From Euprymna scolopes (lineage: Eukaryota): DNA of 64,000 bases. Shown here one piece after another: positions 7,755-64,000 of the stretch. Below the pieces are notes generated by a model, which was not told the origin of the DNA, ran no database searches, and saw only the letters and a program-made list of their open reading frames with translations. A program made the translations under genes and the position numbers. The stretch lies in assembly GCA_053919585.1 (NCBI GenBank), contig CM132788.1; one strand, written 5' to 3'. Within the stretch, counting starts at the first letter, position 1, and each line of letters opens with the position of its first letter.

Positions 7755-7760
7755 TTTGAG

Positions 7761-8252: not shown

Positions 8253-8871
8253 GATGTTTTGATGTCATGGCTTTCAATTCCGTACTGTTAATTTCCCTCT
8301 CTTTAATTTTGCTTTCTTCATGCAACAAGCATTCAGTCACTAACACCCATTTAGGAAAGTCCTGACTTGCTTCAAGTGCTGTTACCAACATATTATAATC
8401 GTCTGGGAGAGTAGCCAGAAGGTGAACAACTCTATCCTCCTCGTCAATGGAATCGCCAATGACAGCCAATTCGTCAAATAATTCCATCATAGTCTTTATG
8501 TGTTCATTGACAGAGTCGCCGTCTTTTAATCTAAGGGAGTATGATTTTCTTCTCAGCACTAGTTTATTTGCCCATGTTTTCTTTTGAAATTGGTCTGCCA
8601 ATTTCTTCCACACAACTGCAGGGTCGTCAGGGTCTTCAATTAAATACAGTAGTGAGGTTTCTACTGAGAGCACAATAGTCGCTAAAGCCCGGTCTCTTCT
8701 CGATAAATATTTCACGTGGGATGCTGGCTCATTTCGTTTGTCCGGAACAATTTCTGTTTCATTAACTATATTCCATAGTCCATCCTTAATTAATGCCATT
8801 TTGCATTGGACCTTCCAGGTATTATAGTTTGAACCATTTAGTGGAACCAAGTTGCTTAGTTTTGTTTCCAT
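8200..8871 (-). pseudogene. Copia Gag
   Basis: LNGSNYNTWK, typical copia gag capsid region, CFHCG start of zinc knuckle. Frameshifted from pol. Confidence 0.9.
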
Positions 8872-28117: not shown

Positions 28118-28125
28118 AACCTCAT

Positions 28126-29004: not shown

Positions 29005-30548
29005 CGACTTGGTAGAATAGCGTTGCCTCTCTGCTTTCCTTATGTGCCATCGTTTCTCGTTCTCTGTTCATTTTTCCTTTTCTGTTCCGCAGATTATATG
29101 CTCCCATACTTCGTCTGGGGTCATATCCGTCTATCTCGTTTATTTCTATGTTTACATCATTCCCCAGTAATAAATCTATGTTTTTCATGGGAAGTTCATC
29201 TATGATTCCCACCTCTATTATCCTCGTAATCTTCCCTGCCTTCAGCTTAATCGTTATCACTGGTATTTTCATATCACATCCTCCTACTCCTCTGATCACC
29301 ACGTGGTTGATAATTCTGTTTCGGGGCGCCATCTTTCTTAGAATCACCGATTGCGCGGCCCCCGTATCCCTTAATAATTTTATCGGTATTTCTCTTCCAT
29401 CTTTCCTTATTATCGTTCCCTTTCTCATGAAAGGTTTATATATATCGTATTTTGGCACTGATGAAACTATTCCTTGTGGCTTAGTTCCCACATTGTTCCT
29501 TAATTCGGTTCCTCGATTCGATCTGCATTGACTTGATATATGTCCTATTTTTCCACATTTATAACACGTGGGTGGGTTCATCCTCTGTAGCGGTGTTGGT
29601 CGGCCATTCCTTGAGTTATCTCCTCGCAGAGTGACTTCTTTCGGTTCATTTGCCCAATTTACTATTTGCAGTTTATTTCTTTCTTTCCAACGGGATATTA
29701 TATATTCGTCAGCCAGTGTTGCTAGCTCACTGCCTGATTTTGCTCCTTTTTCATTTAAGTGTATCCGCATGTCATCAGGTAATCCATTTAATATTTCTTC
29801 GATCAGAATGAGCTGTTTGATTTTTTCTGGGTCTCCGTTCACCCCTTTTGAATCATACCATTTATTCATCGCTCATTCCTTTTCCTTGACAAACTCTCTG
29901 AACGACTGCGTTTCGCTTTTCTTTATCGTTCTGAATTTTTGTCGATAAGCCTCTGGTATTAGTTCGTAACTGCTCAGTATGGCTTGCTTCACTCTCTCAT
30001 AATCTGCCCGTTCTTCGGCCGATAACGCTGTAAAAGCTCTTCGTGCTTTTCCTGTTAACGTGCTCTGTATAAGTGTGGTCCACTTTTCCTGTGGCCATTC
30101 CATGTTGACCGCCATACTTTCAAAATGTGAAAAGTATTCGTCTACGCTTTCCTCTGTAAATTTAGGTACTAACCGTATCTGTTTCGCCAAATCGAACCTG
30201 TCTCGGTTCGTTTCTGTCGTTGCTTCAGCCAACCTGATTTCTCTTATCCAAATTTCCTGTTCCATCCTTGCTTTTTCCAACTCGACTTTTGCTTCAATTT
30301 TATATTTTTCTAACTCTAGCTTTTCCCTTGATAATTCGCTGTGCCATTCATCTAGCGTTTCTGGCGCGAAGATCTGTTTCCTCCACCAGGTGCTCCAGTA
30401 TTATCCCAATAATTTTGTTTTTTCTCATGGCCATTTTTGTTTCTAATTCCAGCCTCTCTCCTACTGCAATTAGCTCGCTTTTCTTCATTTCTTCAAGCTT
30501 TTCGAGAGACGGTTCACTTAGGAATTTCTCCACTCTTCCTGTAGCCAT
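28931..30548 (-). pseudogene. Gmr1-like Gag (SCAN-like capsid, CCHC knuckle) and aspartic protease
   Basis: LVPKF...YFSHFE, YELIPEAYRQKFR, LILIEE...ELATLADEY, CYKCGKIGHISSQC, LLRDTGAAQS, IDLLLGND. Split by stop and frameshift. Confidence 0.85.
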
Positions 30549-32631: not shown

Positions 32632-33408
32632 TTAGAGAGATTGTTCCTTGGGTTCAGATGTGAATCCTAGAATTTTAAAAGAGGGGACTCCCTTTTTTGT
32701 TAAGCCATCAGCAATTTGTTTGTCAGTGGGTATCCAGGATATCTCTGCAATTTCTCCTCTGTCAACCATTTCTCTAAGGATGGCCATCTCAATTCTTAGT
32801 CTTTTATCGAGGATTTGTGTGGTAGAATGCACTGCATCATACAAACAGGAATTGTCTGTTTTGCATGTTATCTTGATGTTTGTAGTGTGATCTTCCATTT
32901 GCAGCAAATCCAGTATCAATTTTCTGTAATAATGGCAGGCTTCAGTAAGATCAACCATGGCCAGAGTCTCCGCAGCAAGCGTGCTTTTGACTATTCTTTT
33001 GATGCGTTTAGATTGCCAGGCTATTGGCATGTATTGGTTATTACTACCAACCAGAAAAATAATGTAGCCACCTTGTGATCCACCGTCAGTTAGGTTAGCA
33101 AAGGATGCATCACTGTATGCTATAATTTGAAGCAATTTAGGGTTTCCAAGATTGGGAATATGGATTTGGGATTTCTCCTTTTTTGCCTTTTTGATAGTCC
33201 TATTTATTTGTTTTATACATTCCACATTTTCTTGTTTTAATATGGAACTCAATGCACTGACATCAAAATTGAGGTCAGGTCTAGTTTGAGTGGCTAGCCA
33301 GTTGAGTTGACCGATTAGCTGTCTGGCCTCAGAGATCTCAGTGGATGTCAGCTTGTCTTCCAGCCTTCTTCCATTCTGCAGCGGAATGTGTCTGAGTTTC
33401 TTGTCCAA
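32632..33408 (-). pseudogene. GalEa-like RT C-terminus and RNase H
   Basis: QLNWLATQTRPDL, YSDASF, KSTLAAE, KTDN, QIADGLTK. Confidence 0.92.
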
Positions 33409-35632
33409 TATTGATGTTACTATTGGATTTTTTTATTTCTAATCCAATATATTGGAACTTGGCAACTTCTTCAGATTTCACTTTGAAAAGTTTACGAAGT
33501 TCATTAATGACTTTGTTCTCAAAGGTTTCTGAACCAGCAAAGCAGAAATCATCGACATGAGTGGCAATTATGCCTTGAAGCTTGTTTTTGAAATGCCAAG
33601 TGAAAATAGCCTGGTCATATTTTGATGGTGTGGCCCCTAGCTTTACTAGTTTCTCTCTAAGTGTTAGGTACCAGGATCGAGATGCATCTGTTAGACCATA
33701 AACACATTTGGATAATTTCCAGATGTAACCAGGGGATACATTGGCTTCTTTGGGAGGAAGAAGGTAGACGGGTCGATCTAATTGCTTGCTTTGTAAAAAG
33801 GCAATTTTGATGTCCATGGATTTGCATACCCAACCACTTGCTGATATAACTCCTAAGACTGATCGTAAACTTTCTTTTGAACATGTTGGGGAGTCATTTC
33901 TAACATTGCAGGCATCTTTATCTTGAAAGCCTTTCGCAACAAGTCTGGCCTTAAAGGTTTGTTTTCCATTCAACTCCTTGTTGGTGTAGACCCATCTTGT
34001 GCATATTTTTGGTTGGCCCTGATCTAATACTTGTGTGTAGACTTTGTGTTCAACCCAACTTTGGAGTTCTCTCTTTTTGGCCTTATCATATTGGTCATTA
34101 GAGGAGTCAGTCATTAGATTTACCTCCGTGGCTTCATTAGTGAGGGGTTGGTCATCTTTGTTTGTCTCCCATTCCAAGACCCCATTCTCAAAATCTAGCC
34201 AGAATGGGTCACCTTCCTCCATAGCAACGTTCATTAAATATTTATTTTTGCCAGTGGCTTTACCAGCTCTACTGATCACATTCAATTTTCTCCATTCTTG
34301 GTCTTCATCATTGGTGAATTTGCATATTATAGTTTGGCCTGGTTTAGGCAGTTGTACAGATTTGGTGGCCACTTTGGGTAACGTGTCACATTCATTGGCC
34401 TCATTCTGCTCAGGGTCATCAATTTCACTGCCCTCATCTATTGGCACATAACCACTTGTGGTGGCATTGTTGTGCCTCTGAGGTTTTGTTCGTACACTGG
34501 TGTCTTGGTGTTCAGAGGTGTTGTGGTATGTGTCAGGATATGGAATTAAGCGTGAAGGATGCACTCTAACGTATGTGGCTTCATGTTTGACTAGTACTTG
34601 TTTATGTTCCCAGCCTATGACAGCACCCGGACCAAGCCATCGATCAGATTCATTTCTTTTAAAAAGGACAAGGTCACCATTCTTGTATTGATCAATTACA
34701 CTGGTTCTCACCTGATGACGGAGAACTCGTCTCAATTTTTCAGAGGCTTCACACTCTATGAAACCTTTTCTTGCAGCATGCATGGCATTGAGGTTGTCAG
34801 CAACAATTTGACTAGTACTCACACCTTCTAGTGCAGGAAGTTGATCATTCAGGAGAGAAGGCAGGTTGGGATTTTTTCCAAAAACCAGTTGGTTAGGGCT
34901 ATAGCCGTGTGAATTGTGAAGTGCATTCTTGGCATTGACCGCCCATGAGAGAGCAACATCAAAGTTACACCGAGCATCTTCTAAAGTCTTCTTGACCATT
35001 TCTCCCAGAACACCATTGTGCCTTTCATTCAATCCATTACTCCAGGGGGATTGTGCAGCAGTGGTACGGACTATGATATTCAAGTTTTGAGCCATGTCTC
35101 GGAAGAATTGATTGTCAAATTCCCGGCCATTATCAGTAAGAAAAGCTGCTGGAGCACCAAAATATGCAATCCAGCGTTTGAAGATGGCAGTGAGTATATC
35201 AGAGCTCTCCTTACTTGTAAGCCTAACAGCGACACTATATCTGGTTGCATGGTCCACCAAGTGTAGTACTTTATGTCCATTAATTTCCTTTATGTCCATG
35301 GCTACAGTCTGGTTAAAATGAGTTCCTAAGGGAAATCCTACAACAGGTCGAGGTGCAGGTTTTTTATACCTGAGGCAGGTCTGACAAGCAAGAGGAAGCT
35401 TCCTCAGTATATCCATAAATTCAGCATCTTTTAAACCAGAGCTTTTGACAAGATTACACAATTTTTGTGCACTGGGATGGCTGAATTGTCGATGTAATTT
35501 GGTAGCAATTTTTAATTTCTCGACTTTGCTCTTTTTATTAATTTTGTTTAAAAATAAAATATATCGTAACTTACCCTGGTCTGGTGGAGGTGTAGATATA
35601 GGGATGTGGTAGTGGCCAGAAGTGGTGCACAC
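33338..35632 (-). pseudogene. GalEa-like integrase and RT
   Basis: LHRQFSH...CQTC, MDI, TDNGREF, SPWSNGLNER, FKARLVAKG, AFLQ, HVDD. Confidence 0.93.
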
Positions 35633-36854
35633 TGCACAGCAACCTTATTTTTTTTCCAAACATTTCCGCTGTGTCATCATTAAAGTTTAGGGTTGTCTGG
35701 GCTCTTTTCATGGCCATCTTGCTTAGTAGCAAAGGGATATCAGCGTCAACAACATCACTCATTATTTTAATGTTCATCTTTGCAATGACACATGGCAAAG
35801 TTACTTTTTGTAGAGATTTTATTTTCATACCATCTCCAAATTTAAAGTATTTTGTGCCCTCATCATAAAGAATGTCTGTTTTTGAGTCCTCGGACAAGGT
35901 TTCAAGAAAACAGTCCAACCATTTCTTTCCACATACCGTCGCTGACGCACCAGAGTCCAAAATAGCACAATTTATGGTTTCTCCGAAAAGCGAGTTCTCC
36001 GATTCCCGTCGATTAAGCAACACTATATTAGCGATGTCTTCAGAACTGCCGGAAATATCGTTTTTATGTTCATTTAATAATACCATATTTTCTCTTGAAT
36101 GGTGATTATTTTGGGAATAAGGACACTTTTTGGCATAGTGAAATTTGCATCCACAGACGTAACAAACGGGAGTCTGATTATTCGAAAAATTTCGATTTGG
36201 GTAGCGGTTATAATTGTGTGGCCGGCCTCTGCCATTATTTGTGCTGCTACTACGCGTGAAGTGAGGGGGAGAGGCAGGCTTATACGCATGACGTCGTCTC
36301 GTGTATAGTATTTCACTGTTGTCCTGTGTCTGTGTGTCTGCCTCACTAAAAACGACGTTGTCAGTTTCATTTTTTATGGAAATGTTTTGTGGTCTAGCTG
36401 TGGTTAAGTTTTCACATGAAATTTTTTTTAATTGTTGAGCCATATCTTTTAGAGTGAGGTTGTTTATTGTCGCGCGTATTAATCTCTCGTTTTCGGGGTT
36501 GAGATTGGCAGACTTTAACGCGCGATAGGCTAATACGGGTTCTGGTAAAATTATTTTAAATTCCCTGAGTTTCGCTACGTGCCTGTCGAACTGGATTAAG
36601 TAGTCATTTATGGAAGCGTTAGGTTCACGCTGATAACTTTCAAAGTTCTCGTAGGATATGAAAGCAGACTGGTTTTTATCCTGAAGAAAAAGTGTATCCA
36701 GCTTTTCGACGAGATTGTCCATTCCTTCTTCGGCATTCAGTAATGAAATGTCCATTTCTAGTACAGCACTACAGCAGCGCGAGACTGTCCGGTGAGCGAA
36801 AGAAATACAGCGGGAGCTTGTTTTGAAGGCGGAATGTTCGTTGCTATCTTCCAT
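35571..36854 (-). pseudogene. GalEa-like Gag and protease
   Basis: CYVCGCKFHYAKKC knuckle, ILDSGASATVCG, IPLLLS. Frameshift near the N-terminus and before integrase. Confidence 0.9.
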
Positions 36855-45659: not shown

Positions 45660-48600
45660 AGTTTTTTTTTTTTTATAAATATTAATTGTAATATTTTGTG
45701 TGTGTGTGTGTAAAAATGTTCAAATTCATTGGAAAATAAAATCTTTGGAATTAAGAGTAAAAATGTTCGTGGGGTGGGGAAAGCTAATCAAAAAAGTTCA
45801 TTTCAAAAATAAATCCTACTGGACTAATCTAGATGACTAGACCCTCCCCTCCCACTGTTTTCCGGGGAACCGAAAACAAGCAGGGCGATTGGGGATTGGG
45901 GATGAAGCCTTAATGGAAATGAGAGAAAACAAAGGAACGGGGATATCAAAAAGCAAAGATGTGGTGCAAAGGGGATGGGCAGACTCTAATACCAAAAAAT
46001 AAAATCAGGAACAGGATCTCATTTGTAAGCGGGATGAGTTCCGAAGGACCCAGCATCGCCCGTGCCATGCTTAAGGGGGGAACACGTATTGAAACTTGGC
46101 TCCTCGACGGATGCACAAACTAGTGTTGTTGAATTTCACTCCAGGCAACCTCCTCCAATCACATCTGATCTTTACTTTAAGCAAATGTTTAAAGTAAACA
46201 ATCAGATCCTGATTCGGAACAGATGTCCCTTCGCGAACCAACTATACACCAGGAAAACCATTCTTTCCTCCCTGGGGAACGGCGGCTCCATGTTGTAAAC
46301 GAAATATCCTATGTCGAGATCGAGCAGCCACTCCGACTTACTTCAATAGGGCCTGGATCCGGCTACAACTAAAAAACGCATGCTTGACTGAATCGAGCCT
46401 GTGTTCATCGCAGCGCGGACCTCGTTTGTTCTTTGTACATGCTGAATTCGTCGAAGAGGGGCAGTGCTTTTCGGATCAGTCGCCAGGTCAGGGAGAATTT
46501 CGAGTTTGTCAGAAAATCCTGTCCCGGTGCCCAACTCCATCGACCAACCTAACCGAGGATCCTTCGCGGTACTCACCACTAACTCCCGATAAAGTCTCTT
46601 TCTAGGCTGTTCGAGGACACTGGCAAAGCTCTAAGTACGGTCCGGCATTCGGCAAAGAACTTGGACTCCCCCTTCGGCCTCCGACCTTCTACCGAATGGG
46701 TTAGGTTTGAAATTGGGAAACGAGTTCTCAACTGCAGGGACCCAAGGAGTATTCTCCTCTAGCGAATGACCCAGGAAAGCCAACCTCTCTGCATTTCTAT
46801 GACAAGAGACTGGGCTGGCTCAGACTCACACAGACCTCTCCGCTTACACAGAAGTGAGTCGAGGCATCTTTGTAAGTGTTCTGCAGGGAGAGGAAGTACA
46901 GACATCGGTAAAGGATGAGCGGAAAGATGTATGTAGCACATGCCTCCGCTCAACACTTCAAGGACAATTTCCTTCAAATCCAAGTCTTGACCGACGATTT
47001 GACCTTGATCTGTACTTCTGACCAATTCTTCTCCAGTTGAAGTCCCGGTCCAAACCGGCCCATCGGTCCAGCTGAAGATTCCTGGAAGCGAGTTTACCCT
47101 GGCCCAGGCCGACAGACTTGCTGCGGTTGAAGACGGCCCCTGTGACTTCTTCATATCGAGCGAGCGCCTTGAACGTCTTGAACACGAACACGGTGACGTC
47201 ATCGGCGAACGCGAAAACCCTGGCTCGTGTGTCTCCAGGTAAAGCAATTCCGCGCAGGACTGGTCTAGTCGCCTTGTCCCTTAACTTGCGAAGGTGGGGT
47301 TCCAACGCCAGGCCGTACAAAAGAGGCGACAGTGGGTAACCCTGACGCACCGACCGGGAGACGGCGAACGGCTCCAACAGCTTACCGTTGATCTGCCTAT
47401 CATACAGGACAAAGATTCACTTGCGGAAGCCCGGATTAAAAAAAAAGTCACCCTAATGGGTTCCGGATCCACTAAGAAGCCTTGCAACCGTCAAAAAAAG
47501 AATTGGGAGCATAAACAGCGACAATCTGTAAAACACTGCAATTAAAGGCAACATCAAAAACGAGCGCCCGCCCGTCCTCGCCTGTGTGAACAACAGTCAT
47601 CGACGCTGGGTGCGACTTAGCTATAAGTATTGCTATATGCTTAGTAAACATCGTAATCATTTACCAGCACCTGACAATCCTCGTCACAAACAAAGTAGGT
47701 CTCCTGGATAGCGGCAATATCTACCTTAAGGGACACCAAGTCTCACAACGCACGAGGCCCCTCACATTAAAAGTGGCCAAGTTCAAAGACATGTTCACTT
47801 ACCTTAAGCAGTGTCACAGGTCTGAAATCCTTGGCAGTCAGGATGTGGTAGGCCTGGCCAAGACTTCCGGTGAGTAAGTCTTCTTCGGGCTGACCATCCT
47901 TGGCTACGCCTCCCACATCCAGAGGAAAGATTAGTTTTAACGCCCTGTATAGTGATGGGTGAACTACCCTCGCATTTCACCAGAGTCTTTAAGGGTGATC
48001 CATGTTTTAGGCCTGGTATCGCTTCTTTGGCTGCCTCCAACATTGACCACAGGGCTTCTGTACGTGAGTCCTTATTGTTCCTTACGAAGGTGGTCAACAT
48101 TGGAGCGTCTGGAAATTGAGCGGAGGCAGTCATGTTGTTGCTACCAATGTACACCAAGTCTCTGAGCTTGTTGTACTGAGTCTTCTGCTTGCCCTTCAAC
48201 TGATGGCAGAAGACTCGTTTCACAGATCCTTCCTCCAAGAAGGAATGGAAGTTTCTTAGTTCGCTCTGTGCAAACCTTGTTGAGAGGAGGAGGAGAAGAA
48301 GGGGGAGGAGGGGCAGGTGTGTTTGGTGCTGGGGAGGGTTCCATTTCTTTTTCTTTCCTATATCTGGAGTTAGTATTTTAGTAAGAGTGGGTTGATTTTG
48401 TGAGGGGGTTGCTCGCTCTGGCTGTGAGGTTTGGGGGATTCAGCCTCGGCATTTACTGGGATGTCTCTTTCAGAGGGTGTGGGGTCGCTCCTTGCCCTCC
48501 TTCTCTTCCTTTTCTTCGACCTTCTTGACTCTGCTGTTACTGTTGCTGCTTTGGAGATCGTGCTTGCTTTTTCTTTTCAGACACCACCTCCTCTTCCTCA

Positions 48601-51179: not shown

Positions 51180-52190
51180 GTGGCTGTGAACTAAAAAAGG
51201 CATTGTTCTGCTTTCCTTGTTTGTTGTTAGGGGGTGATGTAACATGGACAAAAGATAGTTTCAGAACTATTAGCAAAATGAAAGATAGAACTGAAAAGCA
51301 TGAGAAGCACGTTGACAATGTAGTTTCCCTTAGAAACTTAGTGAGGCCTGCAGACTTTCAATCAATCATCATAACATGAATGTAAAGAAGAACCGTGAAA
51401 TTTTATCTAAAATTGTATTTGTGGGAACTTTGAAACTCCCTTATGAGGACATGATGAAAAAGATGATTCAGTAAATCCAAGTGTAGAGTATTTTTTTTTA
51501 AATTTTATTTAATCTGTAAAGTTTAAAAGAAATATATTTGTATATATTTTTTTACTCTGTAAAGTGTACAAAATTTAAAATAGTGTTTTTTAATTAAAAT
51601 GTTTTTGTGTATTACCCCCTTTTTGACAGCTTACAATGGCAAAGTTAAAAATATTTGTATTAAAAAAAAGCAATTTTAATGACAAGCTTATTTTGTTATA
51701 CGTTTTAAATAAAACCGTTGTTAAATAGTAAAACTATAGAGGATTTTTAAATTTTGCATCTTAATTAGATCCAGATTTAAAGAATCACTTAGAAACCAGT
51801 AATGTCTTCAAAGGTGTTTCTAAGACTATTCAGAATGACATACTTGACTATCTTTTACAAATATACCGTGTAAGGCAGAAATTAGCAAAGCTTCCTTTGT
51901 AGCTGTCATGGCTGATGATACAACAGATGTGTCTGAACATACACAAATGATCATTGTTTTACATTTTTTCATCTTGGATGAAAAAATACTTGAACGCATT
52001 TGGGGATTCTTTATTCCAGAAAACCAAACCGCTGATGGGATATCAAAATGTATTCTACAACAATTAGATATAATCCTTCAAGAGAATCGCCAAAAACTGG
52101 TAGCTCAGACATTTGATGATGCAAATGCCATGAAAGGCAAAAAAGCTGGTGCTCAGGCGAAAATAAAAGCAGTTTATAGCGATGTGCATA
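51180..52190 (+). pseudogene. hAT-superfamily transposase remnant (DUF4371/ZMYM1-like)
   Basis: SKTIQND upstream; MADDTTDVS...ERIWGF...ADGI...LVAQTFDDANAMKG...GAQAKIK. Truncated by a LINE fragment at ~52190. Confidence 0.8.
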
Positions 52191-52560
52191 TTCCAGCCAC
52201 CACTGATCCTTCTGAAAGAAGAATCCAGGTTGTCCTTGATGACTATACGTCCAACATGTGGGTGTACCTCAGGGATCGATAAACTTACCTGATAAAATTG
52301 TCTCTAAGACAACGCCACACTATAGATAGCAGGCATGTGGGGAAAATTAATGAGCACATAATGGCTACAAGACTTGGAATGGGGTCAAAACGGTGCCAAG
52401 ACACCAACCACCAAAGATACATTACCTGAAAGTACTTCCTTCAAATTCCTCAGTTTAACGTTCACAGAGAACATGAGTTGGAATAGATACATCGAGATAA
52501 GTAACTTTCTAGCACGGCAGTCTTGGCAATGGCCAAGACTGCCGTGGATTCCTCATCAAA
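52190..52560 (+). mobile_element. CR1/L2-like RT fragment
   Basis: RRIQVVLD...GVPQGS; FKFLSLTFTENMSWNRYI. Confidence 0.6.
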
Positions 52561-53089
52561 CTGTAGACGATCAGGACCAAACTGGATGAGCAGAATAACT
52601 GTTGAACTTTTTTTGGGTGTTCCGGGATCGGAAAGGCTTAAAACGAACTCATATACTGGTATACCTCTCTAAAGTGGTGCTCGTTGTTTTATAATAGTAT
52701 AAACAGACAGAATGGTTAATTGTTGGTATAAACCCTCCAAGAAATTCCAGCAAAAGCTTAATAGCCAGCTGTGGTTCATGCCAGAATGTGCCGCTGCCAA
52801 TATGCGAGTAACCATTTCCACTGCTTTCAGAGAAATAGGTGTACTGTAAAAAAGTAATAAAGAATGCAACGTCAAGTCAAAGTAGCTGAGCAACGGCTTG
52901 GTTCTGATAAATTTTGGTGAATGACAAACTGGGTCCTGATTCGAAGCATGTCCTCTATCCCCAACCATCATCAATGGACCTGAGATAATTTCATCAGCAA
53001 CACTTTTTTCCAAGAACTCGTATGGCCGCCTACATACTGTGTCTGAAACCAAACCGACTATGCGACCAAACCTGTGCGCGATGTTGGCA

Positions 53090-53870
53090 AGATTATCAAA
53101 GATAAGTGTTCAAAAAGCTTCAATGAGAACTAGCTCCCATACTGTTTAAACGTTGTCTTATGCTTTCAATGTTTGAAAACTTCATATGGAGCACCGTATT
53201 TAAAAATTCCAGATTGGTCATCTTGCCTCTAACCCATTTCCTTTGTGTCATGAGTAAGTTGCTGGAATCTGTGATAGAATCACCTCAGCAAAATTATTAT
53301 TAATGACATGCAATGTTCCATACATTACAGGTGATGAAATATCTCACAGGATTAGTGAAGGGCTCTTTTGATAAGGTGTGGCAAGATACTTCACAAGATC
53401 TCCAGCTATGTCCTCTTTTCTCTGGCCACAACTGAATGGCTCCCGTTTTGATGAAGCATCTGAAATGGAACACATCCATCAAATTTATTGTCAAGATAAC
53501 TGGAAAATGATTGGATCATTCTACTGGTATCTCACTACTGATGAAATTCTCTACTCTATAAGGCATGTACTATCTATCTAATTTCGAAACCTAGTAGATG
53601 ATGCCCTTTTCTTTTCCCTGCAGAAAAGACGTTATTTATTTCATGGCAAGTGTTCGTTTGCCAAACTTTAACAAAAACAATCACAAATTTCCCCACTCTC
53701 GCAGATTCCATGAATCTTTCCAAGGACTGTCTGCATTGACCTGCTTCCCGACCGATTGCAAGTCCTTCAAGTCCAGTGTAAACAAGTTTTTATTAAATAA
53801 TTCAAATTGTATTCAATCTACACAATTAACCCTTATCCTTCAGGGCTTTGTAAATAAAAAAAAGAAAAAG
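53090..53870 (+). mobile_element. CR1/L2-like LINE 3' fragment with A-rich tail
   Basis: PISFV...SKLLESVI, YLTTDEILY; collinear with the 2700-3740 LINE; ends in aataaaaaaaagaaaaag. Confidence 0.65.
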
Positions 53871-53962
53871 AAAATTAAGCGATCCGACTCTTTTTTATAT
53901 ACTTTCCCAAAGCTGGTGTGACCAAATTAATTTTGATTTTAAAGTTTTTTATTTCTTATTAA

Positions 53963-53964
<2 letters not shown>

Positions 53965-54023
<59 letters not shown>
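53965..54023. repeat. (TA)n microsatellite
   Basis: Direct reading. Confidence 0.95.
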
Positions 54024-54025
<2 letters not shown>

Positions 54026-54451
54026 AGAATATTATATAAGAATAGCAACAGATATTGAGCAAAAAAAAAAGAAAATGAAACTAAATAGAGTTTTTGTGAC
54101 AATTATTTTATTCTTAGAAATGAGCTTGTATAGAACATAAAAATAAATGATTTAGAAGTTGCAATGCAGATCACATATTTTGACCATTAAATGGAAAAAT
54201 ATTTAAAATTATTCCAAAGCTGTTCCAGGATCGGAAAGGCTTAAAACGAACTTTATGTTTATGTTTCTGATCTGAAAAAAGAAGTTTTAAACAATTATTT
54301 ATTATACAACAGATGTAATTTATATATATATATATATAACAGCAGATAATAACTAAATTAAATTAAATAACTAAATATTAACTGAATTAAATTAAATAAA
54401 TTAAAGTGACTTAATAATACAAAAAGGACATTTTTACTTACATACTATAAA

Positions 54452-54573
54452 GTCTGCATTTCCCAGGAGCATTAAAATCAAGTTGATGTTTCCTGTGAAT
54501 GGTAACATGTATTATTAATTTATTTATCACAGGAAACTTCAACTTGATTTTAATGCTCCTGGGAAATGCAGAC
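54452..54573. other. Hairpin 1 of array unit (47-bp arms, one mismatch, 28-nt AT-rich loop); repeated in every unit
   Basis: gtctgcatttcccaggagcattaaaatcaagttgatgtttcctgtga pairs with tcacaggaaacttcaacttgattttaatgctcctgggaaatgcagac. Confidence 0.9.
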
Positions 54574-54711
54574 CTTAAACACACCTACTTTTGATCATGT
54601 TCGAACTAATTTATAGATATTTATATATTTATACATATAGATAGTAAGGACTTTTTGGATGAACATACATAATATTTCAGAACATACATGAACATACATA
54701 ATATTTTGTGT

Positions 54712-54791
54712 GTGTGTGTTTGACATAATAGACAAGAAACTCGGTGTTGTTATCAACACCGAGTTTCTTATCTATTATGTCAAACACACAC
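54712..54791. other. Hairpin 2 of array unit (38-bp arms, 4-nt loop); repeated in every unit
   Basis: gtgtgtgtttgacataatagacaagaaactcggtgttg-ttat-caacaccgagtttcttatctattatgtcaaacacacac. The single C/A mismatch on + is a G-U pair on the minus-strand RNA. Confidence 0.9.
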
Positions 54792-55358
54792 TGTAACGAA
54801 GCCGGGCGACACCAGATAACCTTGCTTCCTAGGTTGAGGGTGAGTGGGATGGAGCTGGGCGAGAGGTCTCAGTCCCATCTCGTGAGAAACCAACGAATTG
54901 TCATATGCCTTATAGAGTAGAGAATTTCATCAGTAGTGAGATACCAGTAGAATGATCCAATCATTTTCCAGTTATCTTGACAATAAATTTGATGGATGTG
55001 TTCCATTTCAGATGCTTCATCAAAACGGGAGCCATTCAGTTGTGGCCAGAGAAAAGAGGACATAGCTGGAGATCTTGTGAAGTATCTTGCCACACCTTAT
55101 CAAAAGAGCCCTTCACTAATCCTGTGAGATATTTCATCACCTGTAATGTATGGAACATTGCATGTCATTAATAATAATTTTGCTGAGGTGATTCTATCAC
55201 AGATTCCAGCAACTTACTCATGACACAAAGGAAATGGGTTAGAGGCAAGATGACCAATCTGGAATTTTTAAATACGGTGCTCCATATGAACTCTCTAAGG
55301 TGGTGCTCGTTATTTTATAATAGTATCTGACCTGACAGAATGGTTAATTTCCAGAATG

Positions 55359-55625
55359 GAAATTCCAGCAAAATTGTTGGTATAAACCTTCCAAGAAATT
55401 CCAGCAAAATTATTGGCATAAACCTTCCAAGAAATTCCAGCAAAATTGTTGGTATAAACCTTCTAAGAAATTCCAGCAAAATTGTTGGTATAAACCTTCC
55501 AAGAAATTCCAGCAAAATTATTGGTATAAACCTTCCAAGAAATTCCAGCAAAATTGTTGGTATAAACCTTCCAAGAAATTCCAGCAAAATTGTTGATATA
55601 AACCTTTCAAGAAATTCCAGCAAAA
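55359..55625 (+). repeat. 36-bp minisatellite (aattccagcaaaattgttggtataaaccttccaaga, ~7.4 copies) within each array unit
   Basis: Direct reading; 12-aa periodicity in the ORF track. Confidence 0.95.
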
Positions 55626-58600
55626 GAGGTAATCAAGAAATAGAAAAATAAAACACCTTTACAAATAAATAATAGACAATGTTGTTTATCAAATCTGTGT
55701 CATATCAAGTACTTTTAAACGTGTCATATCAAAAATCATGTTATATCCAAAATAAGATCATATAATGTTTTTTATGGAAATTTATTTTGCATTCAATCAG
55801 AAATTATTTTTTTCTACTTAATACTGAACATTCAATTAATAAATTCAAGTTATGCAATTCAAGAAGCTATTATTGTGTATTTAGTTTCATGCAGGAGAAA
55901 AGTGGCAAAATTGATATCCTCATCATAATGAAGTTGATCATGTCAATGTTTCTGATCTGAAAAAAGAAGTTTTAAACAATTATTTATTATACAACAGATG
56001 TAATTTATATATATATATAACAGCAGATAATAACTAAATTAAATTAAATAACTAAATATTAACTGAATTAAATTAAATAAATTAAAGTGACTTAATAATA
56101 CAAAAAGGACATTTTTACTTACATACTATAAAGTCTGCATTTCCCAGGAGCATTAAAATCAAGTTGATGTTTCCTGTGAATGGTAACATGTATTATTAAT
56201 TTATTTATCACAGGAAACTTCAACTTGATTTTAATGCTCCTGGGAAATGCAGACCTTAAACACACCTACTTTTGATCATGTTCGAACTAATTTATAGATA
56301 TTTATATATTTATACATATAGATAGTAAGGACTTTTTGGATGAACATACATAATATTTCAGAACATACATGAACATACATAATATTTTGTGTGTGTGTGT
56401 TTGACATAATAGACAAGAAACTCGGTGTTGTTATCAACACCGAGTTTCTTATCTATTATGTCAAACACACACTGTAACGAAGCCGGGCGACACCAGATAA
56501 CCTTGCTTCCTAGGTTGAGGGTGAGTGGGATGGAGCTGGGCGAGAGGTCTCAGTCCCATCTCGTGAGAAACCAACGAATTGTCATATGCCTTATAGAGTA
56601 GAGAATTTCATCAGTAGTGAGATACCAGTAGAATGATCCAATCATTTTCCAGTTATCTTGACAATAAATTTGATGGATGTGTTCCATTTCAGATGCTTCA
56701 TCAAAACGGGAGCCATTCAGTTGTGGCCAGAGAAAAGAGGACATAGCTGGAGATCTTGTGAAGTATCTTGCCACACCTTATCAAAAGAGCCCTTCACTAA
56801 TCCTGTGAGATATTTCATCACCTGTAATGTATGGAACATTGCATGTCATTAATAATAATTTTGCTGAGGTGATTCTATCACAGATTCCAGCAACTTACTC
56901 ATGACACAAAGGAAATGGGTTAGAGGCAAGATGACCAATCTGGAATTTTTAAATACGGTGCTCCATATGAACTCTCTAAGGTGGTGCTCGTTATTTTATA
57001 ATAGTATCTGACCTGACAGAATGGTTAATTTCCAGAATGGAAATTCCAGCAAAATTGTTGGTATAAACCTTCCAAGAAATTCCAGCAAAATTATTGGCAT
57101 AAACCTTCCAAGAAATTCCAGCAAAATTGTTGGTATAAACCTTCTAAGAAATTCCAGCAAAATTGTTGGTATAAACCTTCCAAGAAATTCCAGCAAAATT
57201 ATTGGTATAAACCTTCCAAGAAATTCCAGCAAAATTGTTGGTATAAACCTTCCAAGAAATTCCAGCAAAATTGTTGGTATAAACCTTTCAAGAAATTCCA
57301 GCAAAAGAGGTAATCAAGAAATAGAAAAATAAAACACCTTTACAAATAAATAATAGACAATGTTGTTTATCAAATCTGTGTCATATCAAGTACTTTTAAA
57401 CGTGTCATATCAAAAATCATGTTATATCCAAAATAAGATCATATAATGTTTTTTATGGAAATTTATTTTGCATTCAATCAGAAATTATTTTTTTCTACTT
57501 AATACTGAACATTCAATTAATAAATTCAAGTTATGCAATTCAAGAAGCTATTATTGTGTATTTAGTTTCATGCAGGAGAAAAGTGGCAAAATTGATATCC
57601 TCATCATAATGAAGTTGATCATGTCAATGTTTCTGATCTGAAAAAAGAAGTTTTAAACAATTATTTATTATACAACAGATGTAATTTATATATATATATA
57701 ACAGCAGATAATAACTAAATTAAATTAAATAACTAAATATTAACTGAATTAAATTAAATAAATTAAAGTGACTTAATAATACAAAAAGGACATTTTTACT
57801 TACATACTATAAAGTCTGCATTTCCCAGGAGCATTAAAATCAAGTTGATGTTTCCTGTGAATGGTAACATGTATTATTAATTTATTTATCACAGGAAACT
57901 TCAACTTGATTTTAATGCTCCTGGGAAATGCAGACCTTAAACACACCTACTTTTGATCATGTTCGAACTAATTTATAGATATTTATATATTTATACATAT
58001 AGATAGTAAGGACTTTTTGGATGAACATACATAATATTTCAGAACATACATGAACATACATAATATTTTGTGTGTGTGTGTTTGACATAATAGACAAGAA
58101 ACTCGGTGTTGTTATCAACACCGAGTTTCTTATCTATTATGTCAAACACACACTGTAACGAAGCCGGGCGACACCAGATAACCTTGCTTCCTAGGTTGAG
58201 GGTGAGTGGGATGGAGCTGGGCGAGAGGTCTCAGTCCCATCTCGTGAGAAACCAACGAATTGTCATATGCCTTATAGAGTAGAGAATTTCATCAGTAGTG
58301 AGATACCAGTAGAATGATCCAATCATTTTCCAGTTATCTTGACAATAAATTTGATGGATGTGTTCCATTTCAGATGCTTCATCAAAACGGGAGCCATTCA
58401 GTTGTGGCCAGAGAAAAGAGGACATAGCTGGAGATCTTGTGAAGTATCTTGCCACACCTTATCAAAAGAGCCCTTCACTAATCCTGTGAGATATTTCATC
58501 ACCTGTAATGTATGGAACATTGCATGTCATTAATAATAATTTTGCTGAGGTGATTCTATCACAGATTCCAGCAACTTACTCATGACACAAAGGAAATGGG

Positions 58601-61600
58601 TTAGAGGCAAGATGACCAATCTGGAATTTTTAAATACGGTGCTCCATATGAACTCTCTAAGGTGGTGCTCGTTATTTTATAATAGTATCTGACCTGACAG
58701 AATGGTTAATTTCCAGAATGGAAATTCCAGCAAAATTGTTGGTATAAACCTTCCAAGAAATTCCAGCAAAATTATTGGCATAAACCTTCCAAGAAATTCC
58801 AGCAAAATTGTTGGTATAAACCTTCTAAGAAATTCCAGCAAAATTGTTGGTATAAACCTTCCAAGAAATTCCAGCAAAATTATTGGTATAAACCTTCCAA
58901 GAAATTCCAGCAAAATTGTTGGTATAAACCTTCCAAGAAATTCCAGCAAAATTGTTGGTATAAACCTTTCAAGAAATTCCAGCAAAAGAGGTAATCAAGA
59001 AATAGAAAAATAAAACACCTTTACAAATAAATAATAGACAATGTTGTTTATCAAATCTGTGTCATATCAAGTACTTTTAAACGTGTCATATCAAAAATCA
59101 TGTTATATCCAAAATAAGATCATATAATGTTTTTTATGGAAATTTATTTTGCATTCAATCAGAAATTATTTTTTTCTACTTAATACTGAACATTCAATTA
59201 ATAAATTCAAGTTATGCAATTCAAGAAGCTATTATTGTGTATTTAGTTTCATGCAGGAGAAAAGTGGCAAAATTGATATCCTCATCATAATGAAGTTGAT
59301 CATGTCAATGTTTCTGATCTGAAAAAAGAAGTTTTAAACAATTATTTATTATACAACAGATGTAATTTATATATATATATATAACAGCAGATAATAACTA
59401 AATTAAATTAAATAACTAAATATTAACTGAATTAAATTAAATAAATTAAAGTGACTTAATAATACAAAAAGGACATTTTTACTTACATACTATAAAGTCT
59501 GCATTTCCCAGGAGCATTAAAATCAAGTTGATGTTTCCTGTGAATGGTAACATGTATTATTAATTTATTTATCACAGGAAACTTCAACTTGATTTTAATG
59601 CTCCTGGGAAATGCAGACCTTAAACACACCTACTTTTGATCATGTTCGAACTAATTTATAGATATTTATATATTTATACATATAGATAGTAAGGACTTTT
59701 TGGATGAACATACATAATATTTCAGAACATACATGAACATACATAATATTTTGTGTGTGTGTGTTTGACATAATAGACAAGAAACTCGGTGTTGTTATCA
59801 ACACCGAGTTTCTTATCTATTATGTCAAACACACACTGTAACGAAGCCGGGCGACACCAGATAACCTTGCTTCCTAGGTTGAGGGTGAGTGGGATGGAGC
59901 TGGGCGAGAGGTCTCAGTCCCATCTCGTGAGAAACCAACGAATTGTCATATGCCTTATAGAGTAGAGAATTTCATCAGTAGTGAGATACCAGTAGAATGA
60001 TCCAATCATTTTCCAGTTATCTTGACAATAAATTTGATGGATGTGTTCCATTTCAGATGCTTCATCAAAACGGGAGCCATTCAGTTGTGGCCAGAGAAAA
60101 GAGGACATAGCTGGAGATCTTGTGAAGTATCTTGCCACACCTTATCAAAAGAGCCCTTCACTAATCCTGTGAGATATTTCATCACCTGTAATGTATGGAA
60201 CATTGCATGTCATTAATAATAATTTTGCTGAGGTGATTCTATCACAGATTCCAGCAACTTACTCATGACACAAAGGAAATGGGTTAGAGGCAAGATGACC
60301 AATCTGGAATTTTTAAATACGGTGCTCCATATGAACTCTCTAAGGTGGTGCTCGTTATTTTATAATAGTATCTGACCTGACAGAATGGTTAATTTCCAGA
60401 ATGGAAATTCCAGCAAAATTGTTGGTATAAACCTTCCAAGAAATTCCAGCAAAATTATTGGCATAAACCTTCCAAGAAATTCCAGCAAAATTGTTGGTAT
60501 AAACCTTCTAAGAAATTCCAGCAAAATTGTTGGTATAAACCTTCCAAGAAATTCCAGCAAAATTATTGGTATAAACCTTCCAAGAAATTCCAGCAAAATT
60601 GTTGGTATAAACCTTCCAAGAAATTCCAGCAAAATTGTTGGTATAAACCTTTCAAGAAATTCCAGCAAAAGAGGTAATCAAGAAATAGAAAAATAAAACA
60701 CCTTTACAAATAAATAATAGACAATGTTGTTTATCAAATCTGTGTCATATCAAGTACTTTTAAACGTGTCATATCAAAAATCATGTTATATCCAAAATAA
60801 GATCATATAATGTTTTTTATGGAAATTTATTTTGCATTCAATCAGAAATTATTTTTTTCTACTTAATACTGAACATTCAATTAATAAATTCAAGTTATGC
60901 AATTCAAGAAGCTATTATTGTGTATTTAGTTTCATGCAGGAGAAAAGTGGCAAAATTGATATCCTCATCATAATGAAGTTGATCATGTCAATGTTTCTGA
61001 TCTGAAAAAAGAAGTTTTAAACAATTATTTATTATACAACAGATGTAATTTATATATATATATATATAACAGCAGATAATAACTAAATTAAATTAAATAA
61101 CTAAATATTAACTGAATTAAATTAAATAAATTAAAGTGACTTAATAATACAAAAAGGACATTTTTACTTACATACTATAAAGTCTGCATTTCCCAGGAGC
61201 ATTAAAATCAAGTTGATGTTTCCTGTGAATGGTAACATGTATTATTAATTTATTTATCACAGGAAACTTCAACTTGATTTTAATGCTCCTGGGAAATGCA
61301 GACCTTAAACACACCTACTTTTGATCATGTTCGAACTAATTTATAGATATTTATATATTTATACATATAGATAGTAAGGACTTTTTGGATGAACATACAT
61401 AATATTTCAGAACATACATGAACATACATAATATTTTGTGTGTGTGTGTTTGACATAATAGACAAGAAACTCGGTGTTGTTATCAACACCGAGTTTCTTA
61501 TCTATTATGTCAAACACACACTGTAACGAAGCCGGGCGACACCAGATAACCTTGCTTCCTAGGTTGAGGGTGAGTGGGATGGAGCTGGGCGAGAGGTCTC

Positions 61601-64000
61601 AGTCCCATCTCGTGAGAAACCAACGAATTGTCATATGCCTTATAGAGTAGAGAATTTCATCAGTAGTGAGATACCAGTAGAATGATCCAATCATTTTCCA
61701 GTTATCTTGACAATAAATTTGATGGATGTGTTCCATTTCAGATGCTTCATCAAAACGGGAGCCATTCAGTTGTGGCCAGAGAAAAGAGGACATAGCTGGA
61801 GATCTTGTGAAGTATCTTGCCACACCTTATCAAAAGAGCCCTTCACTAATCCTGTGAGATATTTCATCACCTGTAATGTATGGAACATTGCATGTCATTA
61901 ATAATAATTTTGCTGAGGTGATTCTATCACAGATTCCAGCAACTTACTCATGACACAAAGGAAATGGGTTAGAGGCAAGATGACCAATCTGGAATTTTTA
62001 AATACTGTGCTCCATATGAACTCTCTAAGGTGGTGCTCGTTATTTTATAATAGTATCTGACCTGACAGAATGGTTAATTTCCAGAATGGAAATTCCAGCA
62101 AAATTGTTGGTATAAACCTTCCAAGAAATTCCAGCAAAATTATTGGCATAAACCTTCCAAGAAATTCCAGCAAAATTGTTGGTATAAACCTTCTAAGAAA
62201 TTCCAGCAAAATTGTTGGTATAAACCTTCCAAGAAATTCCAGCAAAATTATTGGTATAAACCTTCCAAGAAATTCCAGCAAAATTGTTGGTATAAACCTT
62301 CCAAGAAATTCCAGCAAAATTGTTGGTATAAACCTTTCAAGAAATTCCAGCAAAAGAGGTAATCAAGAAATAGAAAAATAAAACACCTTTACAAATAAAT
62401 AATAGACAATGTTGTTTATCAAATCTGTGTCATATCAAGTACTTTTAAACGTGTCATATCAAAAATCATGTTATATCCAAAATAAGATCATATAATGTTT
62501 TTTATGGAAATTTATTTTGCATTCAATCAGAAATTATTTTTTTCTACTTAATACTGAACATTCAATTAATAAATTCAAGTTATGCAATTCAAGAAGCTAT
62601 TATTGTGTATTTAGTTTCATGCAGGAGAAAAGTGGCAAAATTGATATCCTCATCATAATGAAGTTGATCATGTCAATGTTTCTGATCTGAAAAAAGAAGT
62701 TTTAAACAATTATTTATTATACAACAGATGTAATTTATATATATATATAACAGCAGATAATAACTAAATTAAATTAAATAACTAAATATTAACTGAATTA
62801 AATTAAATAAATTAAAGTGACTTAATAATACAAAAAGGACATTTTTACTTACATACTATAAAGTCTGCATTTCCCAGGAGCATTAAAATCAAGTTGATGT
62901 TTCCTGTGAATGGTAACATGTATTATTAATTTATTTATCACAGGAAACTTCAACTTGATTTTAATGCTCCTGGGAAATGCAGACCTTAAACACACCTACT
63001 TTTGATCATGTTCGAACTAATTTATAGATATTTATATATTTATACATATAGATAGTAAGGACTTTTTGGATGAACATACATAATATTTCAGAACATACAT
63101 GAACATACATAATATTTTGTGTGTGTGTGTTTGACATAATAGACAAGAAACTCGGTGTTGTTATCAACACCGAGTTTCTTATCTATTATGTCAAACACAC
63201 ACTGTAACGAAGCCGGGCGACACCAGATAACCTTGCTTCCTAGGTTGAGGGTGAGTGGGATGGAGCTGGGCGAGAGGTCTCAGTCCCATCTCGTGAGAAA
63301 CCAACGAATTGTCATATGCCTTATAGAGTAGAGAATTTCATCAGTAGTGAGATACCAGTAGAATGATCCAATCATTTTCCAGTTATCTTGACAATAAATT
63401 TGATGGATGTGTTCCATTTCAGATGCTTCATCAAAACGGGAGCCATTCAGTTGTGGCCAGAGAAAAGAGGACATAGCTGGAGATCTTGTGAAGTATCTTG
63501 CCACACCTTATCAAAAGAGCCCTTCACTAATCCTGTGAGATATTTCATCACCTGTAATGTATGGAACATTGCATGTCATTAATAATAATTTTGCTGAGGT
63601 GATTCTATCACAGATTCCAGCAACTTACTCATGACACAAAGGAAATGGGTTAGAGGCAAGATGACCAATCTGGAATTTTTAAATACGGTGCTCCATATGA
63701 ACTCTCTAAGGTGGTGCTCGTTATTTTATAATAGTATCTGACCTGACAGAATGGTTAATTTCCAGAATGGAAATTCCAGCAAAATTGTTGGTATAAACCT
63801 TCCAAGAAATTCCAGCAAAATTATTGGCATAAACCTTCCAAGAAATTCCAGCAAAATTGTTGGTATAAACCTTCTAAGAAATTCCAGCAAAATTGTTGGT
63901 ATAAACCTTCCAAGAAATTCCAGCAAAATTATTGGTATAAACCTTCCAAGAAATTCCAGCAAAATTGTTGGTATAAACCTTCCAAGAAATTCCAGCAAAA

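What the first reader, a model, noticed from the sequence alone, without database searches (positions are those of the whole stretch)
54261..64000. Young tandem array of hairpin + hairpin + antisense-LINE cassettes: candidate small-RNA/dsRNA source
Seen: each 1.68-kb unit has two long near-perfect hairpins (122 nt and 80 nt). The second is fully paired with one G-U on the minus strand and is pre-miRNA-sized. Each unit also has a 386-bp CR1/L2-like RT fragment in antisense orientation and a 36-bp minisatellite. Units are almost identical, so amplification or homogenisation is very recent. Established: hairpin-RNA and antisense-TE loci feed siRNA/piRNA pathways. Inference: this may be a newly born, copy-amplified small-RNA cassette acting against a LINE family. 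It could equally be a neutral macrosatellite.
Basis: partly seen in the sequence, partly recalled or inferred. Interest (0 to 1): 0.7.

Follow-up and report, generated by a model that had tools for sequence, protein, structure and literature searches.

The report
Young local 1.68-kb macrosatellite, not RNA gene
A 10.7-kb run of almost identical 1.68-kb DNA units in a transposon-rich part of a squid/cuttlefish-type genome looks like a very recent local duplication that then expanded; no polyA RNA came from its own sequence, and small RNAs could not be tested.

Summary
There are 6 full periods of about 1681 bp plus a 646-bp partial unit, from window 54255 to 996 bp beyond the window end. Units differ by 2 base changes and (TA)n length. 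Each unit holds two very stable palindromes, a 386-bp antisense piece of a decayed LINE reverse transcriptase and a 36-bp x 7.4 minisatellite.

New here:
- The RT piece is a 100% inverted copy of window 53181-53566.
- Each unit also carries the first 113 nt of the 5' LTR of a Ty3/gypsy-type element that begins where the array ends.
- A 98-100% similar paralog 59 kb downstream has the same DNA as a single copy, with no LTR, no inverted piece and shorter hairpins.
- The outer junctions map to one point of that paralog. This fits one templated insertion that made a 646-bp direct repeat, followed by unequal exchange.

Against the small-RNA reading:
- The hairpins occur only here and predate the array.
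- They reach no Rfam threshold.
- Two polyA RNA runs give no reads on unit-specific DNA.
- The LINE piece has no relative above 83% identity outside this locus.

Small-RNA data were not available, so that reading is unsupported rather than refuted. This is an ordinary young macrosatellite with an unusually legible origin.

The parts
51275..54245 (+). Block U: single-copy flank left of the array, shared with the paralog 59 kb downstream. It contains one decayed LINE copy in sense orientation.
   Evidence: window 51275-54245 matches extended 121261-123992 (3007 columns, 85% with gaps); substitution-only identity is mostly 96-100% per 100 aligned columns.
53181..53566 (+). C: source copy of the 386-bp LINE RT piece, sense on +. 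With the first array copy it forms a perfect 386-bp inverted repeat 1338 bp apart.
   Evidence: 100% identical, inverted, to unit positions 581-966; it belongs to a high-copy LINE family whose better copies hit Pfam RVT_1.
54241..54256 (.). J1: left outer junction. The end of U is joined to the last 66 nt of unit part E through about 15 nt of filler.
   Evidence: junction sequences compared with the paralog; 54255-54320 equals unit 1616-1681 at 97%.
54255..64000 (+). Tandem array with a period of about 1681 bp. It has 6 periods plus a 646-nt partial unit and continues to 64996, outside the window. Full units start at 54325, 56006, 57687, 59370, 61055 and 62736.
54448..54577 (.). Hairpin 1 (palindrome, 51-nt arms, 28-nt loop). 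Further copies at 56129-56258, 57810-57939, 59493-59622, 61178-61307 and 62859-62988.
   Evidence: genome-wide there are only the 7 array copies and the paralog; the paralog stem is only 38 bp.
54712..54791 (.). Hairpin 2 (palindrome, 38-nt arms, 4-nt loop). Further copies at 56393-56472, 58074-58153, 59757-59836, 61442-61521 and 63123-63202.
   Evidence: found only in the 7 array copies; the paralog has a shorter, interrupted version; best Rfam hit 39.5 bits against a gathering score of 90.
54792..54904 (+). T: the first 113 nt of the 5' LTR of the Ty3/gypsy-type element that follows the array. Copies at 56473-56585, 58154-58266, 59837-59949, 61522-61634 and 63203-63315.
   Evidence: 38 scored copies genome-wide are 98-100% identical and all stop at this boundary, out of 2921 first-look candidates for the whole 1681-bp unit; elsewhere, and at 64884, the element continues; 100% identical to the LTR start.
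54905..55290 (-). Cinv: inverted 100% copy of 53181-53566 (antisense LINE RT piece). Copies at 56586-56971, 58267-58652, 59950-60335, 61635-62020 and 63316-63701.
   Evidence: blunt junction T|Cinv at 54904/54905.
55291..55358 (+). D: 8 nt of filler (55291-55298) followed by sequence that in the paralog directly follows block U.
   Evidence: Contigs of two public runs cross 55290/55291 without a difference (records 7 and 13).
55359..55625 (+). M: 36-bp minisatellite, 7.4 copies in each unit and about 2 in the paralog. The motif derives from the same LINE family, sense on +.
   Evidence: the paralog alignment has a gap covering about 5 repeats; a single-copy relative lies at 52718-52755 and in family member L040.
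55626..56005 (+). E: AT-rich spacer specific to this locus. Its last 66 nt also stand at the head of the array.
   Evidence: only six array copies, the 66-nt head piece and the paralog in the whole genome.

Best explanation
This is a very young, single-locus macrosatellite in a transposon graveyard of a decapod-cephalopod-type genome. It most likely has no function of its own.

Inferred history, step by step:
1. The ancestral layout, still kept by a paralog 59 kb downstream, was U - D - M - E - A. A carried two older palindromes.
2. In this copy a Ty3/gypsy-type LTR element inserted right after palindrome 2.
3. Later, one break at the U|D border was repaired by copying in two nearby templates. 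The first ran from the tail of E through A and 113 nt into the LTR. The second was a 386-bp piece of the upstream dead LINE, copied in reverse. Junctions have fillers of 8-15 nt or are blunt. This is a replication-type template-switching or templated-insertion event.
4. That event created a 646-bp direct repeat with a 1681-bp period.
5. Unequal exchange or replication slippage between those repeats then expanded it to 6.4 units, so recently that only 2 base changes separate the units.

The two hairpins and the antisense LINE piece are passengers of this history. What is shown: the structure, the junctions, the paralog, the restriction to one locus, and the lack of polyA RNA. What is inferred: the order of events, the repair mechanism and neutrality.
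For: Array phase: it starts with the last 66 nt of E and ends exactly 113 nt into the full LTR, which is n x 1681 + 646.

The paralog has U-D-M-E-A contiguous, an empty LTR site, and no inverted C between A and D. The left outer junction J1 and the inner junction J3 map to the same point of the paralog.

Cinv is 100% identical to 53181-53566 in inverted orientation.

T is the start of an LTR with many near-identical copies: 38 scored copies at 98-100%, out of 2921 first-look candidates for the whole unit. It continues as a full element only after the last unit. That element has RVT_1, RNase H and integrase domains. Its LTRs are 2% diverged in substitutions, whereas array units differ by about 0.02%. 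The expansion is therefore much younger than the insertion.

Unit-specific parts (hairpins, E) occur nowhere else in the 5.9-Gb assembly.

The Cinv|D junction is present without differences in contigs of two public runs from two studies.

There are no polyA RNA reads on unit-specific DNA in two runs. Reads over T and over 55202-55232 run on into other copies.

Known mechanisms that fit: a direct repeat as seed for unequal exchange into arrays (PMC5932611), and replicative template switching giving inverted templated insertions (PMC5120786).
Against: - No small-RNA, total-RNA or germline-labelled data could be examined, so function is not excluded.
- The T|Cinv and U|E-tail junctions were not seen in the contig pieces listed, which had holes at 54034-54410.
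- Contig word depth in run X1 is only 2.4-2.9 times the flank, where about 7 would be expected. The tool warns that this depth is no copy number.
- The order of events rests on a single paralog, with no outgroup species.
Confidence: 0.75

Rival explanations
1. The array is a newly born small-RNA locus. Transcripts through the units would yield piRNAs (from the LTR and LINE pieces) or Dicer products from the two hairpins, or from the 386-bp C/Cinv inverted repeat. Copy amplification would raise the dose.
For: - The hairpins are very stable on both strands.
- There is a perfect 386-bp inverted repeat 1338 bp apart.
- Seven copies of a 113-nt piece match a very young, expressed LTR family at 98-100%.
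- The region is transposon-only, as piRNA clusters are.
- Molluscs express piRNAs widely (cited in PMC8915122).
Against: - No polyA RNA reads on any unit-specific part in two runs.
- The hairpins predate the array and are shorter or broken in the 98-100% similar paralog.
- No Rfam family reaches its threshold.
- Hairpin geometry is unlike pri-miRNAs (PMC10710096).
- The LINE piece has no target above 83% identity outside the locus.
- Every component is accounted for by the rearrangement junctions.
- Lophotrochozoans are reported to lack an siRNA Argonaute (PMC8915122).
Confidence: 0.08
2. The array, or its copy number, is an assembly artefact. The individual would carry only the initial duplication (one or two units) and the assembler over-expanded it.
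For: - Units are nearly identical.
- In run X1 the unit contigs have word depth 45-55 against 18.9 for the flank, a ratio of 2.4-2.9 rather than about 7.
- The T|Cinv junction is not among the listed contig pieces.
Against: - Units are not perfect copies: there are 2 single-base differences and three different (TA)n lengths.
- The Cinv|D junction, which exists only inside the array, is present in two runs of two studies.
- The array ends are in phase with a simple mechanism.
- Depth of Logan contigs is explicitly no copy number.
- A lower ratio could equally reflect copy-number polymorphism between individuals.
Confidence: 0.08
3. Same neutral array, different way of growing. One unit was excised as a circle, or replicated by rolling circle, and reintegrated as a concatemer, rather than growing stepwise by unequal exchange.
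For: All units are essentially identical and carry the same minisatellite copy number, which suits a single burst.
Against: - Reintegration by homology would not by itself explain why J1 and J3 map to one point of the paralog with fillers.
- (TA)n lengths differ between units.
- Nothing in the data distinguishes one burst from several rapid steps.
Confidence: 0.07

Closest known systems
Macrosatellites and young tandem arrays seeded by a local direct repeat and expanded by unequal exchange (model of McGurk and Barbash 2018, PMC5932611)
   Same: Kilobase-sized head-to-tail units, near-identity between units, a single locus and transposon-derived content. A flanking direct repeat sets the array phase.
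   Different: The seed here is not a double transposon insertion. It is a templated insertion that copied 646 bp of neighbouring DNA plus an inverted 386-bp piece. The unit is a mosaic of spacer, LTR start and two LINE fragments.
Complex duplications and insertions by replicative template switching (FoSTeS/MMBIR type; PMC5120786)
   Same: Several nearby templates, one of them inverted, are joined at one site with blunt ends or short fillers.
   Different: That class is known mostly from human patients and tumours. Here it is fixed in a reference assembly of a cephalopod-type genome and was followed by array expansion. The mechanism is inferred from junctions only.
Hairpins made or perfected by template switching between inverted-repeat arms (PMC10710096, PMC13100816)
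   Same: The window's two palindromes are longer and more perfect than those of the paralog. The differences sit at the inner stem and loop, where arm-to-arm copying or central deletion acts.
   Different: With no outgroup the direction cannot be told: extension here or decay in the paralog. No expression or miRNA-like processing is shown.
Drosophila hpRNA loci and tandem piRNA sources such as Su(Ste) (from general knowledge)
   Same: Inverted repeats and tandemly amplified units carrying transposon or gene fragments.
   Different: Those loci are transcribed and yield abundant small RNAs with near-perfect targets. Here no transcription was seen, the LINE piece has no close target, and the lineage is reported to lack the siRNA branch (PMC8915122).

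Membership tests
Macrosatellite / tandem segmental duplication | Head-to-tail units of 1 kb or more with a constant period | tested here: met
   Spacings are 1681, 1681, 1683, 1685 and 1681 bp, giving 6 periods plus a 646-nt partial unit.
Macrosatellite / tandem segmental duplication | Confined to one locus, not dispersed | tested here: met
   Hairpin 1, hairpin 2 and part E occur only in the array and, in part, in the paralog 59 kb away, within a 5.9-Gb assembly.
Macrosatellite / tandem segmental duplication | Copy number varies between individuals | tested here: inconclusive
   The unit/flank contig depth ratio is 2.4-2.9 in X1 and about 1.5-6.7 in X2. The tool states that this depth is no copy number.
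Animal microRNA precursor | Match to a described miRNA family at its curated score | tested here: not met
   Best hits are mir-4803 at 39.5 bits (gathering 90) and mir-284 at 35.7 bits (gathering 60). Many unrelated miRNA models hit the same hairpin, which points to structure-only matches.
Animal microRNA precursor | Imperfect stem of about 35 bp, apical loop of 10 nt or more, single-stranded flanks (PMC10710096) | tested here: not met
   Hairpin 2 has 38-39 contiguous pairs and a 4-nt loop. Hairpin 1 has a 51-bp stem with one internal mismatch.
Animal microRNA precursor | 22-nt reads from both arms with 2-nt 3' overhangs | not testable with these tools
hpRNA / endo-siRNA locus | Inverted repeat transcribed as one RNA | tested here: not met
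   The inverted repeats exist. There are zero polyA RNA reads on unit-specific sequence in X23 and X24, with 12-13% of each run read and tissue unknown.
hpRNA / endo-siRNA locus | siRNA-class Argonaute/Dicer branch present in the lineage | not tested
   Reported absent from annelids and molluscs, including cephalopods (PMC8915122). Not checked in this genome.
piRNA cluster | Fragments antisense to active transposons, giving near-perfect targets | tested here: not met
   The LINE piece has no match above 83% outside the locus. The LTR piece does match a young family at 98-100%, but its presence follows from the duplication limits.
piRNA cluster | 24-32-nt 1U reads with ping-pong or phasing signature | not testable with these tools
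   No small-RNA data were available.
Satellite carried by a mobile element (MITE, Helitron-type) | Unit or its terminal hairpins dispersed in many copies with target-site duplications | tested here: not met
   Searches find only this locus and its paralog.

The most novel reading that the evidence does not exclude
The array is a just-born, copy-amplified small-RNA source, or a double-stranded-RNA source for editing enzymes, expressed only in tissues not sampled here such as germline or embryo. Its seven copies of the start of a very young gypsy-type LTR, its perfect 386-bp inverted repeat and its two long hairpins would supply piRNA or Dicer substrates. It would have been caught at the moment of birth by a template-switching rearrangement.
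Probability: 0.07. Interest if true: 0.55.

Novelty: new member of a known kind. Interest (0 to 1): 0.2.

Why it matters
On its own it matters little. Young tandem duplications in transposon-rich DNA are common, and nothing here points to a function.

Its value is as a clean, datable example of how a macrosatellite can start. Every junction is still readable, and the pre-duplication state is preserved 59 kb away. The LTR gives a relative clock: LTRs are 2% diverged, against about 0.02% between units.

If the array is polymorphic in copy number, it could serve as a marker. It could also be a small test case for array dynamics in very large cephalopod genomes.

Tried and rejected
1. Hairpins as MITEs or another dispersed family. 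Rejected: they occur only in the array and the paralog.

2. Hairpin 2 as a palindrome created at the duplication breakpoint. This was suggested because BLAST similarity to the paralog stops at its centre. Rejected after reading the paralog, which has a shorter, interrupted version at the same place.

3. Perfect conservation of the hairpin-1 arms between the two paralogs as a sign of selection. Rejected: the whole region is 98-100% identical once gaps are set aside.

4. The 113-nt GC-rich block as a small RNA gene or SINE. Rejected: there is no Rfam hit, and elsewhere it continues into a 1079-nt LTR.

5. Pfam on the stop-free pieces of the window's RT fragment gave nothing. The RT identity had to be shown through better-kept family members.

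6. LINE clade (CR1/L2?) through the protein atlas gave only RVT_1. The large protein searches were not spent on this.

7. Copy number from contig depth is not valid according to the tool's own warning.

8. Direction of hairpin change (extension here against decay in the paralog) is undecidable without an outgroup.
Full report
**Observation.** The region holds a true tandem array. Blocks of 300 nt recur six times at 100% identity, with spacings of 1681, 1681, 1683, 1685 and 1681 bp. Whole units are 99.94-100% identical. A multiple alignment of the six full units shows only two single-base differences plus (TA)n length changes at the unit boundary. DNA fetched beyond the window shows that the array goes on for 996 bp. 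It runs from 54255 to extended 64996, which is six periods plus a 646-nt partial unit.

Both hairpins are as described:
- Hairpin 1: 54448-54577, 51-nt arms, 28-nt loop, about -82 to -84 kcal/mol.
- Hairpin 2: 54712-54791, 38-nt arms, 4-nt loop, about -62 to -64 kcal/mol, fully paired on the minus strand.
- Both have z-scores of -14 to -18 against shuffles.

The 36-bp minisatellite has 7.4 copies in every unit.

**Anatomy of a unit.** Numbering runs from 54325 (or 56006).
- A, positions 1-467: AT-rich spacer with the two hairpins.
- T, 468-580.
- Cinv, 581-966.
- D, 967-1034.
- M, 1035-1301: the minisatellite.
- E, 1302-1681.

T is the first 113 nt of an LTR. The genome search returned 38 copies at 98-100% identity (out of 2921 first-look candidates for the whole unit), and all of them stop at the same boundary. 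In other copies, and after the last array unit, the sequence continues as an LTR.

That element spans extended 64884-80455. Its LTRs are 1079 nt long and differ by 22 substitutions, about 2%. It has broken pol reading frames with RVT_1, RNase H and integrase domains in the Ty3/gypsy order. It also carries a nested LINE with an open 1021-aa endonuclease-RT frame.

Cinv is a 100% identical, inverted copy of window 53181-53566. Pfam does not recognise its stop-free pieces. The surrounding DNA belongs to a high-copy interspersed family (6263 first-look candidates). Better-kept members of that family hit RVT_1 and align to the window piece. It is therefore a decayed N-terminal RT fragment of a LINE. 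The clade was not established. D and M derive from another decayed copy of the same family, in sense orientation.

**The paralog and the origin.** A second copy of the neighbourhood lies 59 kb downstream (C6:103661261-103664877). Setting gaps aside, it is 96-100% identical in most 100-column blocks. There the order is U - D - M (about two repeats) - E - A, uninterrupted. It has no LTR (an empty site inside the CA run) and no inverted C between A and D.

In the window the order is:
- U;
- about 15 nt of filler;
- the last 66 nt of E;
- then (A - T - Cinv - 8-nt filler - D - M - E) repeated;
- ending with A and T, where T runs on into the full LTR.

The left outer junction (J1) and the Cinv|D junction (J3) map to the same point of the paralog. 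The T|Cinv junction is blunt.

The simplest reading is one event at the U|D border. It copied in two nearby templates: E-tail through A to 113 nt inside the LTR, and then C in reverse. This is replication-type template switching or templated insertion (PMC5120786). The event produced a 646-bp direct repeat with a period of 1681 bp. Unequal exchange or slippage between such repeats yields exactly the observed phase, n x 1681 + 646. That is the general route from a tandem dimer to an array (PMC5932611).

The LTRs have diverged by 2% while the units differ by about 0.02%. The expansion is therefore far younger than the LTR insertion.

**The hairpins.** Neither hairpin is a dispersed element. Genome-wide, hairpin 1 occurs only in the seven array copies and the paralog, and hairpin 2 only in the seven array copies. 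The paralog has hairpin 1 with a 38-bp stem (an 8-nt gap in the inner left arm). It has hairpin 2 only as an interrupted 11+9-bp version, lacking the tip and 9 nt of the right arm. The palindromes thus predate the array, and their full stems are not maintained in the sister copy.

The differences sit at the inner stem and loop. Two processes act there: arm-to-arm template switching, which extends or perfects palindromes (PMC10710096, PMC13100816), and central deletion, which shortens them. Without an outgroup the direction cannot be told.

All Rfam matches are generic hairpin matches far below the gathering scores, the best being 39.5 bits against 90. A 4-nt loop on a 38-39-bp perfect stem, or a 51-bp stem, does not fit the roughly 35-bp stem and 10-nt-or-longer loop preferred for pri-miRNAs (PMC10710096).

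**Expression and reads.** One search and one read-laying run were allowed. The runs are labelled with a coded organism and with mollusc or invertebrate metagenomes.

Two polyA RNA-seq runs were read as raw reads, about 12-13% of each. They put no read on hairpin 1, D, M or E. Hairpin 2 is touched only by the first bin of the T pile (54734-54814), where the depth is 0.3-2.2. Reads pile only on T and on a roughly 30-nt stretch (55202-55232). About 88% of these reads run on into unlike sequence, so they come from other copies of the LTR and LINE families.

Contigs from two other runs, in two studies, cross the array-specific Cinv|D junction at 55261-55386 with no difference. One of those runs carries Tn5 adapter ends and is probably DNA. 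That junction is therefore real.

The E-region contigs listed carry the paralog's variants. J1 and the T|Cinv junction were not covered by the listed pieces. Unit contigs have 2.4-2.9 times the word depth of the flank in the best run, which is less than the seven copies assembled. The tool warns that this depth is not a copy number. It remains only a hint of polymorphism or over-assembly.

**Targets.** Outside this locus the 386-bp LINE piece matches nothing better than 79-83% over about 105 nt. Antisense RNAs from it would lack near-perfect targets. Only the 113-nt LTR start has many near-identical relatives, and its presence follows from where the duplication ended.

The literature reports that annelids and molluscs, cephalopods included, lack a distinct siRNA Argonaute and endo-siRNAs (PMC8915122). 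This lowers the prior for a hairpin-siRNA role. miRNA and piRNA routes remain possible in principle.

**Context.** All 14 large open frames that gave a Pfam hit, in the window and downstream, gave only transposon domains: copia-type, gypsy-type and LINE. Five frames gave no hit, and no host-gene domain was seen.

The assembly has 5.9 Gb and at least 46 large contigs. Earlier notes of this scan call it squid/cuttlefish-type. I did not verify the species.

**Verdict.** It is a new member of a known kind and of low general interest. Its merit is that its birth by a templated, partly inverted insertion can be read directly.

Noticed in passing
L013:884 to L016:6455 (extended 64884-80455): A 15.6-kb Ty3/gypsy-type LTR element sits directly after the array. 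Its LTRs are 1079 nt long and 2% diverged, its pol is split over several frames, and several ORFs downstream of pol have no Pfam hit. The first 113 nt of its LTR recur at 98-100% identity in the 38 scored copies on many chromosomes (2921 first-look candidates for the whole unit query), so the family looks very recently active, and polyA RNA reads show it is expressed.
   Followed up: partly
L016:891-3956: Nested inside that LTR element is a LINE with an uninterrupted 1021-aa frame carrying endonuclease and RVT_1 domains. It is possibly a still-competent copy.
   Followed up: no
window 53181-53566 and 54905-55290: A perfect 386-bp inverted repeat separated by 1338 bp (the source LINE piece and its first inverted copy). 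If transcribed through, it would form a much longer duplex than either hairpin.
   Followed up: partly
G000:C6:103661261-103664877 (L014/L015, L033): A young paralog of window 51275-54791 lies 59 kb downstream. It is 96-100% identical apart from indels, with stretches of about 1.2 kb with almost no substitution (52327-53585). This suggests a recent segmental duplication or gene conversion.
   Followed up: partly
L016:7895-9793, and the paralog side at extended about 125700-134200: Fields of a degenerate AT-rich repeat of about 27 nt (65-81% matches) flank both paralogs on the right.
   Followed up: no
window 55202-55232: This stretch of about 30 nt inside the LINE piece belongs to an extremely abundant repeat. 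Summed contig word depth exceeds 100,000 in run X1, and many polyA RNA reads match only this stretch.
   Followed up: no
window 5161-8871 (-), 27047-29869 (-), 32632-36854 (-), 46759-47377 (-): The rest of the window is a transposon graveyard: copia-type gag/integrase/RVT_2, gypsy-type RNase H and zinc knuckle, a second RVT_2/integrase element, and a LINE RT. No host gene was seen.
   Followed up: partly
window 54814: The array's LTR piece has A where nearly all other copies in the read data have G (15710 of 15728 depth in X1). This is a private marker of this insertion, shared by all array units.
   Followed up: no
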